A stretch of 60,415 nt of DNA, the filler included, from Dugesia japonica (Eukaryota): the NCBI GenBank assembly GCA_001938525.1. It is 6 parts of 6 records of this genome, joined end to end, with 100 filler letters (N's around TTAATTAATTAA, not from the genome) between each part and the next. Parts side by side here need not be neighbours in the genome. Positions count along the whole stretch, not along the records: positions 51,173 to 60,415 come from MQRL01633481.1; 5 more parts are not named here. One strand, 5' to 3'. The notes under the pieces are model-generated. The model did not search any database and was not told the origin of the DNA. It saw only the letters and a list, made by a program, of their open reading frames with translations. Numbering within the stretch: position 1 is the first letter of the stretch; each line of letters begins with the position of its first letter. Below, one piece after another: positions 3,130 to 60,415 of this stretch. Position numbers and translations under genes: made by a program.

Positions 3130-3575
3130 AAAATGAAAGTGAAGTCTTCAAACACTTTCAACAAAAACATAGAATTTCACAAGAACAACATCACATACCA
3201 TTGAAAACCCTAGGAGCAGGCTATATTTCTACACTACATAGAAAAAAAAACAAAGAAATACTTATCAAAGAAGACAAACCTAAAATAAATATAATTTACA
3301 ATAATTAAAATAAATAATTAAATTTAAAATAAGAACTAAATTTACCAATTAAAATTTAATAAAGATGAATTACTTAAAAAATTAATACTATTATAAACAT
3401 AAATGTTGAATAAATTAAAAAAGTGAATTCCTGACGAATACAAAGTCGAAATATCGAATCAATCTCAAAAAACAAAAAAAATATTTTTGATCGAAGCTTT
3501 TATTTAAATGAATTCTAAAAAAACGATCAATGGTTACGTTCAACAATTATTCTTGCAATGATTCCAAATGTAAAA
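3130..3575 (+). mobile_element. Penelope-like element 3' remnant (GIY-YIG C-terminus and 3' tail with hammerhead)
   Basis: NESEVFKHFQQKH...LKTLGAGY...HRK, then after a frameshift LIKEDKPKINI, matches the C-terminal half of PLE GIY-YIG endonucleases. It is followed by the ~160-nt hammerhead-bearing repeat at 3421-3575. Confidence 0.7.
3425..3460 (+). ncRNA. Minimal type I hammerhead ribozyme motif, slightly degenerate
   Basis: GAATTC-CTGACGA-ATACAAAGTC-GAAA-TATC-GAATC. The core is intact, helix II has one mismatch and helix I has 4 bp. Confidence 0.65.
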
Positions 3576-28914: not shown

Positions 28915-29195
28915 TTTAAAATAAAAGCGCCTATCAAAGTTTATTTTTGTTTTTTTTATTGATATTTGATAACAATTCGGGATTTCGATTTAGTCTTCTT
29001 TTTAAGATTTTAAGATTTAGTCTTCTTCAGGAATTGACTTTAAAAAGTCAATTCCTGAAGAAGACTAAGTCGAAATCCCGAATTCTTATCAAATATCAAT
29101 AAAAAAAAATTTTTGATCGACGCTTTTAGTTTAAATGAATTCTGAAAAACGATCAATGGTTAAGTCCAACATTTATTCTCGCAATAATTTCAATT
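28915..29195. repeat. Head-to-head palindromic pair of the hammerhead-bearing PLE repeat
   Basis: Centre GAATTGACTTT-AA-AAAGTCAATTC at ~29041. The plus copy reads CAATTC-CTGAAGA-AGACTAAGTC-GAAA-TCCC-GAATTC; the minus copy has an insertion in helix II. Both copies carry TCCC instead of TATC. Confidence 0.9.
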
Positions 29196-45799: not shown

Positions 45800-46060
45800 C
45801 TCTTTTAAAATAAAAACTTCGATCAAAATTTTTGTTTTTTTTATTGATATTTGATAACAATTCGATATTTCGACCTTGTCTTCGTCAGGAATTGACATTT
45901 TTGACTTCATGACGGAGACAAGGTCGAAATATCGAATTTTTATCAAATATCAATAAAAAAACAAAAATTTTGATCGAAGCTTTTATTTTAAATTAATTCT
46001 GTAAAACGATCAATGGTTCTGTCCAGCAATTATTCTCGCAATAATTGCAATTGTAAAATA
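45800..46060. repeat. Head-to-head palindromic pair of the hammerhead-bearing PLE repeat (intronic)
   Basis: The minus arm ~45803-45897 and the plus arm ~45906-46060 are about 90 bp of near-perfect inverted sequence. Confidence 0.9.
45858..45894 (-). ncRNA. Intact minimal type I hammerhead ribozyme motif
   Basis: Minus strand CAATTC-CTGACGA-A-GAC-AAG-GTC-GAAA-TA-TC^GAATTG: a 6-bp helix I, a 3-bp helix II, a palindromic AUAU helix III and an AUC cleavage triplet. Confidence 0.8.
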
Positions 46061-51172: not shown

Positions 51173-51389
51173 TTATTCTTTTATTGATTTGCCACAAAAA
51201 ATTCCCCGAATCAACCTGTCTATTTAATTTACCTCACAATTACCAACCAATATTTTGTCAATTGTCTACGAAGTTAATGAATTTAGAAATTGTTTATTAT
51301 ATCCATTTGCTTGCAGTAACTTTAATAAATGTTCAATGCTTTTTATGGATTTTGAATAAGTTGGAGACAACGAACAGGAACGAAATACT

Positions 51390-51640
51390 AAACCCCTTTA
51401 TCATGTTCGTTTTATAAGCAGGATCACAAAAACTATTTGGGGTAACATACAAGTCAGTATCACTTTTCTCTCTGTAGTTTTCAGTCTCACAATGTGTTAA
51501 TTTTCTTTCTATTAAAATATCCAAAAAAGGAAAAATACCATTTCTTTCCTCTTCTACAGTAAATCTAATATTAGGATGTAACAAATTCATAAAACTCTAG
51601 AAAAGCAAAACATGTTCACGATTACCAAAAATAAGGTAAG
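51390..51640 (-). mobile_element. Penelope-like RT C-terminal fragment
   Basis: MNLLHPNIRFTVEEERNGIFPFLDILI...YREKSDTDLY...S....YK is the PLE RT motif 6-7/thumb signature. Confidence 0.85.
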
Positions 51641-52140
51641 CTAATATGAATTGTATCTCTTATAGTTCGAAATTGATTTTCAATTATTCGATTACTTCAA
51701 TAGTGATATGGACTAAAGTATTGAATTTCACAATTAAATTCCTTATAAAATTGTTGGAATACATTTGATTCAAATGATTTTCTACTATCTGTATGTATTA
51801 TTCTTGGTGCACTATATTTCAAAATCCAATTATTTTTAAATATTTTATCAATGGTTTTTTCATCTTGATCTGAAACTGCATTGAGAGATATAAATTTACT
51901 AACTTTATCAATTAAAGCTAAAATGTATAAAGTCTTTCTTTAAAGGACCACAAAAATCAAAATGAATGATTTCAAAGATTTTATCAACTGGAATACTAAT
52001 AATTTTTTTTTGTTTTAATTATCTGTCTTTTTCTTAATTGAGAATTTTTACAACTTTGAGTAACCGTTTTTACAATTTCTTCTAGACCTTCCATATAGTT
52101 TTCTCTTATATGAGCTACCATTTTTTGAAATCCTACATTG

Positions 52141-52302
52141 AAAAGTCAATTCCTGAAGAAGACAAAGTCGAAATATCGAATTGTTATCAAAAACCAAAAA
52201 AAACACAAAAACTTTCATTGAAGCTTTTTTTAAATGAATTCTGAAAAACGATCAATGGTTATGTCCAACAATTATTCTCGCAATAATTGTAATTGTAAAA
52301 TA
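52141..52302 (+). mobile_element. ~160-nt hammerhead-bearing PLE repeat inserted in the gypsy integrase
   Basis: It interrupts HKSL.|NVGFQKM of the integrase Zn finger. The full unit runs AAAAGTCAATTC...CTCGCAATAATTGTAATTGTAAAATA. Confidence 0.9.
52147..52183 (+). ncRNA. Intact minimal type I hammerhead ribozyme motif
   Basis: CAATTC-CTGAAGA-A-GAC-AAA-GTC-GAAA-TA-TC^GAATTG; predicted cleavage after C52177. Confidence 0.8.
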
Positions 52303-53869
52303 ATGACTTGTGCTCATTTCTTACAAATAATTGTCTGCATTCTAAAGGAATCCAAATTTTATTATTATTTTTCATTATGATACCATTTGAAAACTTAAAT
52401 TTTGAATTCATTTCACCATTTTAAGTTACCTTTTATAATATTAATTTCTTCAGAGTTTTCTTGCCATTTATTACCGTTTGTTTTAAGCTCAATTGCTAAA
52501 ATTTTTGTTTTCATTTTCGCCTTTTTCGCATTTTCATCATCCATTTGACATTGAATACATGTTTTACAATTATTCTTTGACATTAAGTCAGCATTTAAAT
52601 GACATTCTCCTTTTCTGTAGTCCATAATCATATCCAAACTACTTAAACGATTGATCCATGCCGGGAATTGTAAAGTAATCGGTTTTTATGCATTAATCAT
52701 AAAAGTTATGGCTTTGTGGTCAGTTCGAACTTTAAATCTATTCCAGTATAAATAGTGTTTATAATATTCCATGAAATAATAAATTGATAGAAGCTCTTTT
52801 CTGGTTATTCAATAAACTAATTCATGTTTACTCATTGCTTTTGATCCATAAGTTATAACCCGTTCATTGTCTTGTTCATCTAACTGTGATAATACATCAT
52901 CAAATGCGTCAAAGCTAGCATCTGTATCTAGTATGAATTCTTTGAAAAAATCTTGATAAATAAGTATAGGAGCCTTCATTAATTCTTGTTTTAAAGCACA
53001 AAACTTTGTTTACATTGATCTGACCAAATTAGTTTATTTATATTGTTTCCACATAAACTTTCTAATATCCTCGGTTGTTTTGAATAATATTTAATAAATT
53101 TTCTGTAATAATTTGGCATTCGGTTGAAGCAAAATTGACCAAGCTTTGTAGAAAATCCCGTTTTGTATTTTGAACTTTCCTCTAATTCTACCTGGTAATA
53201 TGCATTAATCAAATCTATCGTTGTAAAATATTTTAATCTATTCAAAATGTCAAGCATTTATCCTATATTTGGTATTGGGAACAATGGTTTCTCCGTTATA
53301 TTATTCATAAATCTAAAATCTAAAAAATTCTAATGTCTTTTGTCTTTTTCTTTCAAACACACACTAATGGACAATTCCACTCAGAATCATATCGTTTAAT
53401 TATACCTTTTCTTCCCTTTCTAAACTAGCCTTGTTAATTTGTTAATAGGTTGTCGCCTAGAATTTACTACAACTGGACCACCGTGGGTAACACTTTCATG
53501 TTTTAATAGTGTTGACTTACCTATATCCCATTTATCTTTTAAAAAAATTTCTCAAAATCGTTCAATTATATCACTAATATTTTTATTTACTTTATTTTTA
53601 AAGTTCATAGTTTTTATTTCCAATATTTCTTTATAAATATAATTTAGCATTTTTAATTTTATATTAAATTTAGATAACAAATCAATTCCCGCAATAAGAC
53701 TAGGCGAAATATTATCTACAACATAAAACTTATTATATTCTGTTTGATTATTAAGTGTAATTTTTTATAAAATACTTTCTATTATTTTTAGTTGACTTTC
53801 ATTAGCACAAGTAACATAAATATATTCACTTTTAATTGTAGTATTATTTAATTTTAACAATATAGCAAC

Positions 53870-55900
53870 CACACCAAGCTCAAACTTAGTAACAGATTTG
53901 TTATGCCCGAAACTTTTCAAGTTAAACAACAATCTGGAAAGATTCTTAGGAATGTCGGTCGATTCTTCAAAGCGGCCAAAATTCCCTTCATCCATTCACA
54001 AAAACTGGCAGATAAACTGCTTAGCCATAATCTGTCAAAAGAGTCGTTAATAGCAACACTCCTGATAAGCGCAATGGCATAGAAGAAAGCAAAGAAAGAG
54101 ATTCTGATGAAAAAAGTTTCTAATCCGGAAGAAATAAGTAATTATTAGAGACGTTTCAAGGATCGCCAAAAAGACAGAATGAATAACCGTGATGCGTAGC
54201 TACAAGAAGGCATTAAACACGAAACCAAAAAGAACAGTACCAAAGATGCAAGAATCAACGTTCAAAGAGCCAAATACCAGTAGGAAGTTCAGAACAGAGA
54301 AATTAGAATGTTGAAATTGTCACAAATTGGGATACATAAGCAGGGAGTGCCCAGAAAAAAGCCTCGTACATGCTACGCAAGTGTAGGGCACATAAAAAGA
54401 CAGAGCAACAAGATAAAGTGCGAGAAATGCAACAAGAACGATCATAAAAACCAAAAACTGTTTCACAAAGAGGGAGTACAAGAGATGGAACGAATATCCT
54501 TAAGAATTTAAGAGAACTAATTATATAGGCGAAGATTCACTCTACGAACAGACCATAAGGAGATTACGTTTATGTTAACTACAAAGAAACCTATATCGGC
54601 ACAATTTCAAAATTGAATCAACTACTTAAGTAGATTAGACATTGACTTATATTATCGGAAAGACGACAAACATAGCAAAGAAAATTTTCTCTGAAGGCAG
54701 GAATGTATCACATTAGTACAGTGCTTGATGACACACGAAGATCCTATAGGAAGCAAATCAAAAACAATACGTTTGAATACAATAACGGAGACATCGGAAT
54801 GAAAAAAAGAGATAATGAATAGATATGAATATTACGAGAACAGATCACATATGGGAAACAAGAGAGATTCCAATGGATAGACGGCCAGATATTAACACAA
54901 AACGGAAAGATTTGGATACCAACAGATAAAAAATCAGATATTATCAGAGAAAAGCACCAGTTGTTAGCACACGTAGGAACAGAATATGATGACAAATATA
55001 TTAGGGAACAGTATGAGATGACTAGGTTATAGAGAAGTGTAAAGGAAATTGTGGATAGATGCGAATCATGCCAGCGAGTGAAGGTGATAACAACTAAACT
55101 AAAGAAGAAACTTTAAAATCTGAGTTGGCAAGGCCGTTTCAGAGATATATATTAATATAGCTAGACCATGGCCAGAAACGTTCCAAAAAAAGAATTATAT
55201 CGTGAACGTTATCGATCAGAATAGTAAATATATATCATTGACAGCTCCAGCAAAACAAGATGAAGAGTCAATAACTTGTGTATTGAAAGATAACAGAATA
55301 TTAAAGGTAGGAGCTTCGAGATATATTCATACAAATTGTCGTAAAGTATTTAAATAATAAAGAATAAAGAAATTAGCAGATGAGATGAATATTAAGCTTT
55401 TTTTTCAAGTCCTTATTACCACAATACGAATGGACAAGTAAAAAGACGATTTCGGAATATTGGAGACTGAATTTGGGCATTAATATCAGAGAGAAACACA
55501 AATAATTGAGCCGAAATTCTACCAGAGACTAAATTTGCGATGAAAGCGACAGTACAGAAAACAACAGTTAAAAGCCCGGCGGAAAGAGTGTTTGGTAAAA
55601 ATATCAGCAGTTAAAGGTGGTTCCCATCTCGACAACTAGAGTTCGAGAAAGTAAACCAGAACATTCGCTATTGGAGATGCAGTGGTTATCAAGTAGGAAA
55701 CAAGAAATAAGGATCAGTATCGTTTTGTAAGTTGATTCATAATAGTAAACAAGATACATGACCGAAGATATCTGGTTCGAGATGCTCTGGGTCGGATAAT
55801 GGAAACAAATTTTGAAAAGATCAGAAGACTTCTTAAAGAAGGGGAATGTGAGAATGATATTTGAATTGTTTCATTTCAAATTTATTTATAAAATTTTTGA
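53870..55900 (+). mobile_element. Ty3/gypsy element of a second family: gag and integrase, PPT, start of 3' LTR; protease/RT absent
   Basis: Gag knuckles CWNCHK.GH, CYA..GH and CEKCNK.DH. Integrase H..LAHVG...C..CQ.VK, SPYYHNTNGQV. The PPT AAAGAAGGGGAA at 55835-55846 is followed by TGTGAG. Confidence 0.88.
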
Positions 55901-56557
55901 AATTTAAAATCTTTCGAAAAAATAATTAAAGTAATTATTGCGCATATTTGTTTAAATAATAAAACTTTCCTGATTTACTTTTTCAATTTATAGTAACTTT
56001 GTATTAAATATATGTTTGATGAGGAGTGTTTTTCTTGCTAATAATNNNNNNNNNNNNNNNNNNNNNNNNNNNNNNNNNNNNNNNNNNNNNNNNNNNNNNN
56101 NNNNNNNNNNNNNNNNNNNNNNNNNNNNNNNNAACAACAATTACATGAATAGGTGTCATTATTGATGTGTTTAATTTAGCATTTTTCATTGACATAAAAT
56201 AATTGACGTAATTGTTCAAATGGAGAGAATCGACATAAATATAAACATTTAAAATATTTTATTTTAAAATTAATTTTTTTTTGAATAAAACCCATAATAT
56301 TACTTATAAAAATATAAAATAATAATTATACGTATAGTTCTTTCTAAATAAATATGTAAAAAAAATAAATTTATTTTATTTATTTATGAAATGGAAAATT
56401 AGTTTTGTAAAGAGTTTCAATTTTATTGAAGAAAATTGAAAATAATTATTGATTTTAGTTTACGAATTTATANNNNNNNNNNNNNNNNNNNNNNNNNNNN
56501 NNNNNNNNNNNNNNNNNNNNNNNNNNNNNNNNNNNNNNNAAAAAAAAATTAGTTTAC

Positions 56558-57029
56558 CTAATATTGATAAACTTCTTTCATAGATGTCTGAATTTAATAT
56601 TTCAACGGCTCCAAAACTTGTAAAATATGTCGCCCATAAATTTGAATCAACTTTAAACATTCCAAAAAACAAATAAATCTCATCTTTGACAACATCCGCT
56701 AAACAATCTAAAGAACTACCAAATCCATTGATTTTTACGGATTTTCTATTTGTCCAACCATTCTCATCATTGGATTTCTTTTTAAAACTTTGCCATCCTT
56801 TTAATACGTCGATTATTTCACATTGAGCTGAATAAAATTTAATAGCTTTTGTTGTGGGCTCGAATTTTTTTAAAACTTTGATTATTAAAACTATTTCAGC
56901 CCGTTCAATTCTTTCTTCTACAGACATTTGTGACCAGTGATTATTTAACATTTCAATACAACAGTAAGTTAAATGAAGGGAAATTATTAATTTCAAAATT
57001 ATAGCAATTATGACTGGAATTGAATGCAT
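56558..57029 (-). CDS. First coding exon of a secreted protein with an agrin N-terminal (NtA) domain
   Basis: The ATG at 57029 starts a hydrophobic signal peptide (MHSIPVIIAIILKLIISLHLTYC). SVEERIERAEIVL..KV, YSA.C.I..VLKG, V.INGFG...DC.ADV and YLFF fit NtA. A phase-1 donor TTAG|gtaaac follows 56558. Confidence 0.85.
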
Positions 57030-57780
57030 AATTTTCTTTTTATTTGTATTAAAAATGATAAAGTGGCAGATCTTACACAGTCTATATATGGATTCAATTG
57101 ACCGCAACGGTATTGGCGCCAATAAGGTGATTACAGCAGTTTACTGATGTCGCCTTCAATTGCTTACGTCAATAGACGAACCATTGAGGGACATGCATCA
57201 ATGCGTTGTGAATCAGGTTTAATTTTTGTGGTCTTTTGTCGCAGAACACTTGGATGATCATTCATATAATTACGTTTAATAAACAGAAATATACTATGAT
57301 GGTTACCGTCTCATTATTAACACATCACTTTGATAAAATTATCAATTTTAAATTTTATAATGCTAATAAATAAATAAATACTATATTAGATTAACCACTA
57401 ATTTGATCCGTATATTATATTTCTTGATGTATATTTAAAAAAAATTTTTAACTGTCAATTTACATTGAATAATATTTAAATTTAATATTAAATGATATAA
57501 ATATTAAGTTGTTTTAACTCTATTTAGTTATCTAACAACGCAAGGTCAAATTTCATTTAAAAAAAAATTGAAATAATTATAATAAACTAAATCTACACAC
57601 AAACATTATTATATTCTATACACAAACTATTGTAACATGTTTAATGTGTATATGGAAATTTGTTTAGAAAATATATTAGTAAAATTAAAATTATTGTATT
57701 TTAATGGTGGATATAAATGATAATAATAATTTTAAAAATTAATATTTCTTAATTTCTCATTAGAAATATAAACAGAAATA

Positions 57781-57885
57781 AAAAAGTCAATTCCTCACCA
57801 AGACAAAGTCAAAAATTAAAATTATTTTCAGAAACAAATAAGATAAAGCAATCATGATCGAAGCTTTTATTTTAATGAATTCAGA
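57781..57885 (+). repeat. Decayed copy of the hammerhead-bearing repeat
   Basis: AAAAAGTCAATTCCTCACCAAGACAAAGTCAAAAA...GATCGAAGCTTTTATTTTAATGAATTC; the catalytic core is mutated. Confidence 0.75.
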
Positions 57886-58329
57886 AATATTAATCTATTT
57901 ATTTCAATAAAAGAAATACTATAGTTTTACAATAAAAGCATAATCCAAACATTATTTCATAACAATAATAATAATAACAATCTGAATAAAATATCCTACA
58001 TTTCAAGAATAAACTTCTACAAATTGTCAGCAACAAAATAATCTTATCACTTTCATAAAAAATAAAATATATAAAAGCAAGTCAATTTAACGTTATATAT
58101 TATTTTTTTCGACCCAGTTCGACAGCTTATCTCGATTAATAATTGATATAAATGGTTTTTTATTATGGGTGTGCATTAATCTTTAGGGATAAGAAAGGGA
58201 TGGTTTAATAAGTACTATTATATAACATCTCACAACATTTTTTCCATCCTCTCGTCAAATAATCAATATATAAATATCATTTTTAATGTATCATTTTAAA
58301 AGTACTAAAAATATTTTTTAGTTTTAAAA

Positions 58330-58770
58330 TATAAAATGTCTATATTTATCACAACAAAACACCATTTGCTGGAAGCTATGCTTTTTTGCAATCATTTGAA
58401 AAAACGTCCTGGCGAATGTAAAGAAATACTGTCAAAAGCCTCTGGAGATTGTAGAACTTGCTACTACTTGCGTTTAGTTTGTTGTAAAACATTTACTGCG
58501 CATAGTTTAAATCTTATTGGATTTGCTGAAATCGTACGAAAATCTATTATAGATCTGATCATCAACATTTGTAGTTTCTCGTTTTCTTTCATTTTCAGTT
58601 TTACATTCATAGCTACCAGTTTCTTTGAAATCTTTAAGACATTTAGAGGCTGCAGATTGTGATTTACTAATTCTCTTTGTCATTTCTCTCCCAGTTAATC
58701 TGCAATCGTCATATGCTGGAGTTGATTCTTTTTGAAAGTTTATAAACTCTTGATGCTGATTTCATCCCTA
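58330..58770 (-). mobile_element. Tc1-like transposase N-terminal (HTH) remnant
   Basis: LTGREMTKRISKSQSAASKCLKDFKETGSYECK..NERKRETTNVDDQI fits the Tc1 paired-like HTH/GRPRKT region. Confidence 0.6.
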
Positions 58771-60415
58771 TTTCCAGTTAATTAGAATTCTAATTCTAAA
58801 ACAAATATTTTAAAAAACAAATTTTGTTAATATTTTCTAATACAAAGATCAAAATGATGTTCTTCTTTTTCTGAAAATTAATTCAATATTTTTAAAACTG
58901 ATATTATTTTTTTCTTTACTCTTTATCAAAAGTGTTTGAGTAGAAATCGCACTATGAAAAACATTTCTCCAGAGATAATGAATTAAGATTTGGAAAAAGA
59001 ATCATTACTAAATTTAAATAGAAAAATACAGTTATACAAGTTTGTGAACTAAAATTTGTGTCGTGAGTAAACAAACATCCCCTAAAGAGTAGTTTTACAT
59101 TTTTGTTAGCCATTATATTTTCTATTATTATAATTTTCTTTTTTATAATTTTTTCAAAATTAATATACATATTTAAAATGTTTTTAACATCAATATAAAG
59201 TAAACAATTCATCAGTTGATAATCATGTCTATAATATCACATAATATTTGGATAATTTTATGAAGTAATAGAAATAGTAAAATTTGAAGCATCTGTTAAG
59301 GATGTATTATATTTATATATGTTGGGATTTTACCCTTGTTGGGTTGCATTCTTGTATGATTTAAATTTAGGAGGGTCAAACTTTATATAAAATTAAGTCT
59401 AGGGTAATTGACCTGGTAAAACCCCGCGATGAATTTGAATCTGGTGTCCCCAAAAATCCAGATCTTCGGGATGAAGCCGTTGACTCGTAGCTCGAGTACA
59501 GACTCGCACCCCTTTATTTCGGGTTCTTTTCACACTATACTCGCCCGATTTAAATCCTACTTATTAATCATTAATTTATTAGATTTCCGTTTAACACCTG
59601 TTTCGATGAANNNNNNNNNNNNNNNNNNNNNNNNNNNNNNNNNNNNNNNNNNNNNNNNNNTTGAGTCTTAATTAATTATAAATTTTCGTTTTCAAAATTA
59701 AACATATTTAGTTGGGTTCAGTTACTCATTACGTATAGTTGAACACTCCATACTCTAAGATTTAAAATTATCAAGAACGCAAGTTTGTAACAAGTTGAAA
59801 AATGTATTCAATTATCAAATCACCACTTGCTATAAATTAAGTTAACAAATAGGACAATTAATAAAACTAACGTGGTCTGGATCTCGATCCGGAGCAAGCA
59901 CGAAGTTTGAATTATCATTTCCTTGATAGATATTACTGATTAAATGGATCCACCATAATTTTCCATATTCGGTTCAAGTCGGAAATCGTTGCATTCGTGC
60001 TTGAATCACAAGAATATTTACTTTAAGTAATCTCCGTTTAATTACCGTATTTTTCGTGAAAAGATAGATTGACTGAATGAAAATTACATCGGTATTTATA
60101 CTGGTTTTTTCTTCACACCCCCATTACTTTTATTGGTTATTTAGAATCGTACGACTTTCTTGACGTTTTCATTGGCTTGAANNNNNNNNNNNNNNNNNNN
60201 NNNNNNNNNNNNNNNNNNNNNNNNNNTCTATTGGTCAACCTTCAAACCCCTGTATCTTTTTTCTGAGACTTCTACCGACATTTTAACTTAGATTCTCAAA
60301 ATCTCCGATTTTTTCTTGATCAGAATCTTTTTAATTGCTAATTCTCACCATGGGAAGTCGTTGTTTTTGCCATTTTTCATGAAATAATTATTTTTCTTTT
60401 AAAAATAATTTATTT

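What the first reader, a model, noticed from the sequence alone, without database searches (positions are those of the whole stretch)
52141..52302. Dispersed ~160-nt repeat family built around a minimal hammerhead ribozyme
Seen: the same unit occurs at 3421, 20550 (tail only), 28915-29195 (two copies), 45800-46060 (two copies), 52141 and 57781, in five of six unrelated contigs. Its 5' end folds as CAAUUC-CUGA(A/C)GA-A-GAC-loop-GUC-GAAA-UA-UC^GAAUUG. Variation among the better copies falls at tolerated positions (N7 A/C; loop AAA/AAG/UAA). Established: such minimal type I hammerheads with a palindromic helix III are typical of Penelope-like elements and are thought to act as dimers. Seen: only the 3421 copy retains upstream GIY-YIG sequence, whereas several others start at the same AAAAGTCAATTC point, and the 52141 copy is a clean insertion into a gypsy integrase. 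Inference: this may be a non-autonomous ribozyme-defined SINE/retrozyme-like element mobilised by a PLE, at very high copy number.
Basis: partly seen in the sequence, partly recalled or inferred. Interest (0 to 1): 0.8.

Follow-up and report, generated by a model that had tools for sequence, protein, structure and literature searches.

The report
Solo Penelope-type hammerhead repeat unit
A 151-base insert carrying a textbook minimal hammerhead ribozyme motif sits inside a decayed retrotransposon gene; it is most likely an ordinary short retrocopy made by a Penelope-like element, a kind already described in many animal genomes.

Summary
The motif is real. At 52147-52183 (+) every invariant hammerhead position is present, with the extra base after A9 and the palindromic one-pair helix III typical of Penelope-like-element (PLE) ribozymes. 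A descriptor scan finds it once in the piece and never in 3000 simulated pieces.

It heads a 151-nt insert (52141-52291, not 52302). The insert is flanked by a 4-bp direct repeat and splits the integrase zinc-finger domain of a decayed LTR retroelement.

A second copy starts at the same base (57782). Its core is dead (G5, G8 and G12 changed), and similarity is secure for only about 110 nt.

A PLE reverse-transcriptase fragment lies 500 nt away. Two PLE relatives fetched from public contigs carry the same style of ribozyme just after their reading frame.

The predicted cut site lies 37 nt inside the unit, so the unit's ends are not set by the ribozyme. They fit an internal reverse-transcription start, as shown for an anole PLE.

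I could not test copy number, tandem copies or a self-propagating SINE/retrozyme-like lineage, because no copy outside the piece could be reached. Solo PLE hammerheads and PLE-derived non-autonomous units are already published. This is a new member of a known kind, of modest interest.

The parts
52141..52291 (+). Repeat unit, copy 1: a complete 151-nt insertion (hammerhead motif, an A/C-rich stretch, a conserved ATG region, a terminal hairpin)
   Evidence: Bounded on both sides by integrase-coding flanks and a 4-bp direct repeat. Aligned to copy 2.
52147..52183 (+). Minimal type I hammerhead motif: helix I 6 bp, CUGAAGA, bulged A, helix II 3 bp with loop AAA, GAAA, helix III of one pair with palindromic AUAU, C17 at 52177. 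Predicted cut between 52177 and 52178.
   Evidence: Sequence. Only descriptor hit in the piece, 0 in 3000 simulations. Energies. No Rfam hit.
52137..52140 (.). Left copy of the 4-bp direct repeat ATTG (putative target-site duplication)
   Evidence: The phase offset between the two flanking frames equals 155 nt mod 3, that is the unit plus one repeat copy (ORF frames).
52292..52295 (.). Right copy of the 4-bp direct repeat ATTG
52268..52290 (+). 9-bp hairpin with a 5-nt loop at the very 3' end of the unit; candidate reverse-transcription start structure
   Evidence: z = -3.6; 2 of 200 shuffles fold as well. Not clearly kept in copy 2.
57782..57890 (+). Repeat unit, copy 2: the securely alignable part. 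It may run to about 57930, where AATAA recurs as at 57777-57781. The hammerhead core is destroyed.
51700..53257 (-). Decayed LTR-retroelement pol remnant (RT, RNase H, integrase zinc finger, integrase core) that hosts copy 1. It has at least three frame changes besides the nested insertion, and most of the RT and integrase-core profiles are not detectable.
   Evidence: Pfam: RVT_1, RT_RNaseH_2 and RT_RNaseH; zf-H2C2, Integrase_H2C2 and rve; ORF frames.
51251..51641 (-). 5'-truncated Penelope-like-element RT/thumb fragment with at least one frameshift. Its 3' part is cut off by the edge of the piece.
   Evidence: phmmer gave 582 hits. Relatives carry RVT_1 plus GIY-YIG. tblastn matches P0005 residues 204-333.

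Best explanation
The 151-nt unit is a short retrocopy of the hammerhead-bearing end segment of a Penelope-like element (PLE), made and inserted by PLE reverse transcriptase and GIY-YIG endonuclease.

Inferred steps:
- The enzyme nicked an AT-rich target containing ATT.
- It began cDNA synthesis at an internal site of the element RNA about 114 nt downstream of the ribozyme cut site, at a terminal hairpin.
- It copied up to an RNA 5' end lying 37 nt upstream of the cut site.
- Repair left a 4-bp duplication.

On this reading the unit's ends are set by the reverse transcriptase and the template's 5' end, not by ribozyme cleavage. The hammerhead is carried along as cargo. As a solo genomic copy with a 3-bp helix II, a one-pair helix III and no partner nearby, it is most likely inert. 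Copy 2 shows neutral decay of the core.

Shown: the motif, the insertion bounds, the direct repeat, PLE presence, and the same ribozyme style in PLE relatives.

Inferred: which enzyme made it, the start site, the template, and the inactivity.
For: - All invariant hammerhead positions are present, together with the PLE-specific traits listed in PMC4209133: an extra base between A9 and G10.1, the G10.1-C11.1 pair, and a palindromic helix III.
- The motif is unique in the piece and absent from 3000 simulations.
- It is a clean insertion with an ATTG repeat in an integrase zinc finger.
- A PLE RT fragment lies 500 nt away.
- PLE relatives L006 and L011 carry the same style of ribozyme 77-110 nt after their ORF stop. 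Their helix II differs in sequence but stays paired. The five chance core matches from metagenomes fail the descriptor.
- The anole PLE starts reverse transcription internally, 85-92 nt past its hammerhead cut site, at a stem-loop, after cutting at ATT. Its insertion does not need ribozyme activity (PMC11167929).
- Here the cut-site-to-end distance is 114 nt, and the unit ends in a 9-bp hairpin.
- Copy 2 begins at the same base but has G5, G8 and G12 changed.
Against: - No PLE reading frame adjoins either copy in this piece, and the parent element was not found.
- The tails of the nearest PLE relatives resemble each other, not this unit.
- Rfam models do not recognise the motif.
- There are only two copies, and the 3' end of copy 2 is not alignable above background.
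- The orientation rests on the motif alone.
- Nearest-neighbour energies favour neither the monomer fold (-5.3 against an MFE of -6.7 kcal/mol) nor the double hammerhead (-6.2 against -15.3). That fits inactivity, but it also weakens the case that this is a working ribozyme.
- A 4-bp repeat is weak on its own.
Confidence: 0.6

Rival explanations
1. One reading: a self-propagating non-autonomous family (retrozyme- or SINE-like). Unit-length RNA, possibly from tandem copies, is cut by dimeric hammerheads and circularised. PLE enzymes then copy it, and a single lap around the circle gives discrete ends.
For: - Both short copies in the piece start at exactly the same base.
- Both are about 150 nt if the AATAA repeat marks the end of copy 2.
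- The unit size is close to published metazoan retrozymes of 170-400 nt. PLE-derived non-autonomous units are documented.
- The palindromic helix III fits action as a dimer.
Against: - Both copies here are solo and 5.6 kb apart, with no tandem arrangement.
- There is no pol III A/B box and no tRNA-like head.
- The 3' boundary of copy 2 is not shown.
- One of the two cores is dead.
- Copy number and subfamily structure could not be examined, because no other copy could be reached.
Confidence: 0.25
2. The element lies on the minus strand. The shared AAAAGTC end is then the common 3' end of an ordinary 5'-truncated retroposon, and the hammerhead motif is antisense or fortuitous.
For: The two copies share one end precisely and lose similarity towards the other. 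That is the usual pattern of 5' truncation when read on the minus strand. A direct repeat does not give orientation.
Against: - A complete hammerhead with all the PLE-specific traits is very unlikely by chance.
- PLE relatives carry the motif in sense, downstream of the reading frame.
- The minus-strand end has no poly(A) or other known 3' signature.
Confidence: 0.08
3. A chance hammerhead-like string in an unrelated AT-rich repeat.
For: - A 20-base core pattern alone occurred five times by chance in bacterial coding sequence in the metagenome scan.
- There is no Rfam hit.
- The fold is not favoured thermodynamically.
Against: - Those five chance hits all fail the full descriptor, while this site and two PLE relatives pass it.
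- The motif sits at the head of a repeated, repeat-flanked insert in a piece that holds PLE remains.
Confidence: 0.03

Closest known systems
Minimal hammerheads of Penelope-like elements (Cervera & de la Pena 2014, PMC4209133; dimer-acting small variants of Lunse et al. 2017, cited in PMC6765202)
   Same: Type I topology; CUGANGA and GAAA boxes; an unpaired base between A9 and G10.1; the G10.1-C11.1 pair; a one-pair helix III with a palindromic loop; occurrence mostly as single, scattered copies attributed to truncated PLEs.
   Different: Helix II here is only 3 bp with a 3-nt loop, whereas 6-8 bp is usual in the published families and 5-6 bp in relatives L006 and L011. Helix I is a full 6 bp. 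No PLE frame is attached in this piece.
Anole Poseidon PLE (PAc) terminal architecture (Frangieh et al. 2024, PMC11167929)
   Same: A hammerhead followed by about 100 nt up to an internal reverse-transcription start in a stem-loop; a target containing ATT; a ribozyme not needed for insertion and inactive without protein.
   Different: No sequence similarity was tested or claimed. The distance from cut site to end is 114 nt against 85-92 nt. The start-site role of the 52268-52290 hairpin is inference only.
Metazoan non-LTR retrozymes (Cervera & de la Pena 2020, PMC7229834; Li, Clavereau & Pollet 2026 preprint)
   Same: Short non-coding units with a type I hammerhead, thought to depend on PLEs. 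Dispersed monomers are reported alongside arrays.
   Different: The defining tandem arrangement and circular RNA are not seen or not testable here. The published invertebrate examples have efficient canonical ribozymes with loop-loop contacts, and this one is minimal.
Schistosome Sm-alpha/Sj-alpha SINE-like elements with hammerheads (cited in PMC6765202)
   Same: A short interspersed unit carrying a hammerhead.
   Different: Those elements carry a pol III promoter. No A/B box or tRNA-like head is present here.

Membership tests
Hammerhead ribozyme, minimal type I (PLE style) | Invariant core: C3 U4 G5 A6 N7 G8 A9, G12 A13 A14, A15.1-U16.1, H17 | tested here: met
   52153-52159, 52170-52173, 52176 and C52177; descriptor hit. 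Not met in copy 2, where G5, G8 and G12 are changed.
Hammerhead ribozyme, minimal type I (PLE style) | Helices I and II pair, with G10.1-C11.1 closing helix II and the open ends in helix I | tested here: met
   Helix I 6 bp, helix II 3 bp. The fold is 1.4 kcal/mol above the MFE, with a pair probability of about 0.05.
Hammerhead ribozyme, minimal type I (PLE style) | Unpaired base between A9 and G10.1, and a palindromic helix III/loop 3 (PMC4209133) | tested here: met
   A52160; AUAU at 52173-52176.
Hammerhead ribozyme, minimal type I (PLE style) | Recognised by the curated Rfam hammerhead covariance models | tested here: not met
   No hammerhead family at E<=1 on the piece or at E<=10 on 52100-52330. 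The PLE relative L006 is missed as well, so the models do not cover this minimal form.
Hammerhead ribozyme, minimal type I (PLE style) | Core and pairings kept across copies (conservation, compensatory change) | tested here: inconclusive
   Only two copies are available. Ribozyme identity of 76% is no higher than in neighbouring segments. Helix II differs but stays paired between this unit, L006 and L011, though these are different families.
Hammerhead ribozyme, minimal type I (PLE style) | Self-cleavage at H17 | not testable with these tools
   No RNA data or assay available.
Penelope-like element terminal segment | Lies downstream of, and in sense with, an RT plus GIY-YIG reading frame | tested here: not met
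   tblastn with 75 PLE relatives finds no PLE coding remnant upstream of either copy. The only PLE fragment (51251-51641) is on the other strand. The feature is met in relatives L006 and L011.
Penelope-like element terminal segment | PLEs present in the same genome | tested here: met
Penelope-like element terminal segment | Short target duplication at an AT-rich site | tested here: met
   ATTG at 52137-52140 and 52292-52295. Four bases is weak on its own.
Metazoan non-LTR retrozyme | Head-to-tail tandem repeats, each with a hammerhead | tested here: not met
   The two copies are solo and 5641 nt apart. The rest of the genome was not available.
Metazoan non-LTR retrozyme | Unit-length linear and circular RNAs | not testable with these tools
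   No expression data.
SINE (pol III-driven, Sm-alpha-like) | Internal A and B boxes or a tRNA/5S/7SL-derived head | tested here: not met
   No match within either copy at up to 2 mismatches, and no tRNA found.

The most novel reading that the evidence does not exclude
The short units could form an independent lineage: a 150-nt 'SINE of PLEs' that spreads as single units. Its discrete 5' end would lie upstream of the ribozyme rather than at the cut site. The hammerhead plus the downstream hairpin would then be the recognition module that recruits PLE reverse transcriptase, so the ribozyme fold would be kept for binding rather than for cleavage.
Probability: 0.2. Interest if true: 0.55.

Novelty: new member of a known kind. 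Interest (0 to 1): 0.25.

Why it matters
What PLE hammerheads are for is still open. They are dispensable for insertion in vitro and absent from the most successful PLE clades (PMC11167929, PMC8557442). A family of short units with sharply defined ends that do not coincide with the cut site would give a clean data set for one question: does selection act on the ribozyme core, and therefore on cleavage, or only on the fold and the downstream start site, and therefore on enzyme recognition? As it stands this is one intact and one dead copy of a known kind of element. Its practical value is for repeat annotation of this AT-rich genome.

Tried and rejected
- **Rfam:** cmscan at E<=1 on the piece and at E<=10 on the unit and on L006 gave only chance hits and no hammerhead.
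- **Pattern scans for more copies:** viral contigs gave 0 hits twice. The JGI metagenome scan gave 5 hits, all chance matches in GC-rich bacterial coding DNA. Prokaryote genomes gave 0.
- **Reaching the source genome by identity:** three window ORFs are not on record, so copy number and end distributions could not be measured.
- **Word search with the 194-aa ORF at 56541-57122:** no relatives, so the organism stays unidentified.
- **Supplementary files** of the two key PLE papers are not held. The Lunse et al. paper is not held.
- **Full-text search** for the core string found only unrelated papers.
- **L010,** from a eukaryote chromosome, is a distant PLE relative in a genome of different composition and carries no such unit.
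- **SINE head:** rejected, with no A/B box or tRNA.
- **Terminal hairpin as a conserved feature:** copy 2 shows only a weak, different hairpin, so this remains a lead.
- **Start codon reading:** the ATG at 52234 may be the parent element's start codon, as in the anole PLE. This could not be tested, because copy 2 is decayed and PLE N-termini are not conserved.

Full report
**Scope.** Only 51173-60415 was available. It is AT-rich (28% G+C), shows no CpG depletion (o/e 0.95) and holds four internal N runs, which were left alone.

**The observation.**
- Numbered as a hammerhead:
  - helix I is 52147-52152 paired with 52178-52183 (6 bp);
  - C3-A9 is CUGAAGA at 52153-52159;
  - an extra A sits at 52160;
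  - helix II is GAC/GUC at 52161-63 and 52167-69, with loop AAA;
  - G12-A14 and A15.1 are 52170-52173;
  - UA follows, then U16.1 at 52176 and C17 at 52177.
- I wrote a general descriptor: CUGANGA, an optional bulge, helix II of at least 3 bp closed by G-C, GAAA, a palindromic helix III, H17, and helix I of at least 4 bp.
- It hits this site and no other on either strand. It hit nothing in 3000 first-order Markov simulations of the piece.
- Five chance matches to the bare 20-base core in bacterial coding DNA from metagenomes all fail the full descriptor.
- Rfam's hammerhead models do not see the motif, even at E<=10. They also miss the equivalent motif of a true PLE relative, so this negative reflects model coverage.

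**The unit and its bounds.**
- On the minus strand the surroundings are a decayed LTR-retroelement pol, with RVT_1, RNase H, an integrase zinc finger and an rve core in the right order.
- The flank to the left of the insert matches Integrase_H2C2 from profile position 22 of 59 and zf-H2C2 from position 7 of 39, so the domain is cut at the edge of the insert.
- ATTG occurs at 52137-52140 and again at 52292-52295. The phase offset between the two flanking frames equals 155 nt (unit plus one repeat) modulo 3.
- The insert is therefore 52141-52291, 151 nt.
- The pol remnant shows at least three frame changes besides this insertion, and most of the RT and rve profiles are undetectable. I did not follow the frame path across breaks.

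**The second copy.**
- It starts at the same base (57782).
- Identity to copy 1 is 100% over the first 6 nt, 76% over the ribozyme, 63% and 74% over the next two segments up to 52250, and 46% over the last 41 nt. Unrelated flanks give 35-41%.
- Its core is dead: G5, G8 and G12 are changed, and two helix I pairs are lost.
- AATAA recurs at 57777-57781 and 57931-57935. That would make this copy 149 nt, but in such AT-rich sequence this is only a hint.
- A shared 5' boundary is therefore established. A shared 3' boundary is not.

**Link to Penelope-like elements.**
- A minus-strand fragment at 51251-51641 is a PLE RT/thumb remnant.
  - phmmer against 1.8 billion representatives gave 582 hits.
  - The longer ones carry RVT_1 and GIY-YIG.
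  - tblastn places the fragment on residues 204-333 of a 505-aa relative.
  - It has at least one frameshift, is 5'-truncated, and is cut by the edge of the piece.
- Contigs encoding two relatives have a hammerhead of the same style: bulged base, G-C-closed helix II of 5-6 bp, and GAAA followed by a palindromic AU run. It lies 77 and 110 nt after the ORF stop (L006, L011).
- Helix II differs in sequence among the three but stays paired.
- The tails of L006 and L011 resemble each other, not this unit. The unit's parent family is therefore a different, unseen PLE.
- No PLE coding remnant lies upstream of either copy.

**Mechanism.**
- The predicted cut lies 37 nt inside the unit, so cleavage defines neither end.
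- For the anole PLE, reverse transcription starts internally in a stem-loop 85-92 nt past the hammerhead cut site, after nicking at an ATT motif. Ribozyme mutants do not affect insertion, and the ribozyme cleaves only with protein present (PMC11167929).
- Here the cut-to-end distance is 114 nt. The unit ends in a 9-bp hairpin (z = -3.6). The duplicated target contains ATT.
- I therefore read the unit as a PLE-made retrocopy. Its 3' end is the internal start site, and its 5' end is the template's 5' end, or a favoured stop.
- An ATG at 52234, in the best-conserved stretch after the ribozyme, opens a frame that runs to the end of the unit. This would fit a leader-plus-ORF-start arrangement, but I could not test it.
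- Nearest-neighbour energies do not favour the ribozyme fold. The monomer is at -5.3 against an MFE of -6.7 kcal/mol, and the double hammerhead at -6.2 against -15.3.
- With a 3-bp helix II, no loop contacts and no partner within 5.6 kb, the solo copy is most likely inert.

**Rivals.**
- A self-propagating retrozyme- or SINE-like lineage remains possible. The identical 5' start of both short copies speaks for a discrete unit. Tandem structure is absent here, and copy number and subfamilies could not be examined.
- There is no pol III box or tRNA-like head.
- A minus-strand reading, in which the shared end is a common 3' end, fits the similarity gradient but not the complete sense-strand motif.
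- Chance is very unlikely.

**Novelty.** Scattered single PLE hammerheads 'probably related to truncated PLEs' were reported in 2014. Metazoan retrozymes followed in 2020, and their derivation from PLE terminal repeats in 2026. This is a new member of a known kind.

Noticed in passing
window 51251-51641 (-): A 5'-truncated Penelope-like-element RT/thumb fragment abuts the integrase core remnant of the same decayed LTR retroelement. That element therefore took two PLE-type insertions. The fragment's 3' tail lies beyond the edge of the piece.
   Followed up: yes
window 56541-57122 (-): A stop-free stretch of 194 codons running into an N run has a sub-threshold Agrin NtA hit (E 1e-4) and no relatives in the word-based protein search. 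Its nature is unknown.
   Followed up: partly
window 54173-55672 (+): This block has higher G+C (33-36%) and a strong A-over-T skew (up to +0.39) but no long ORF. There is a sub-threshold zinc-finger hit at 54308-54511. It is possibly another decayed element.
   Followed up: no
L011 1-70 versus 2232-2300: The contig of a PLE relative begins with an inverted copy of its own 3' untranslated region, and that copy stops at the first bases of the hammerhead core. This matches the inverted partial copies described for PLEs, though a contig-end artefact is possible.
   Followed up: partly
L006 2127-2239 and L011 2325-2400: The roughly 70 nt downstream of the hammerhead are recognisably alike in two PLE relatives from different samples. 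This suggests a conserved post-ribozyme segment, the region where the anole PLE starts reverse transcription.
   Followed up: no
window 52215-52258 (+): There is a weak Rfam match to the K10 transport/localisation element (20 bits against a gathering score of 43, E 0.076). It lies over an AU-rich hairpin around the conserved ATG and is most likely chance.
   Followed up: no
window 57805-57820 versus 52169-52178: Both CpG sites of the intact ribozyme (C11.1-G12 and C17-G1.1) are lost in copy 2, although the piece as a whole shows no CpG depletion (o/e 0.95).
   Followed up: no
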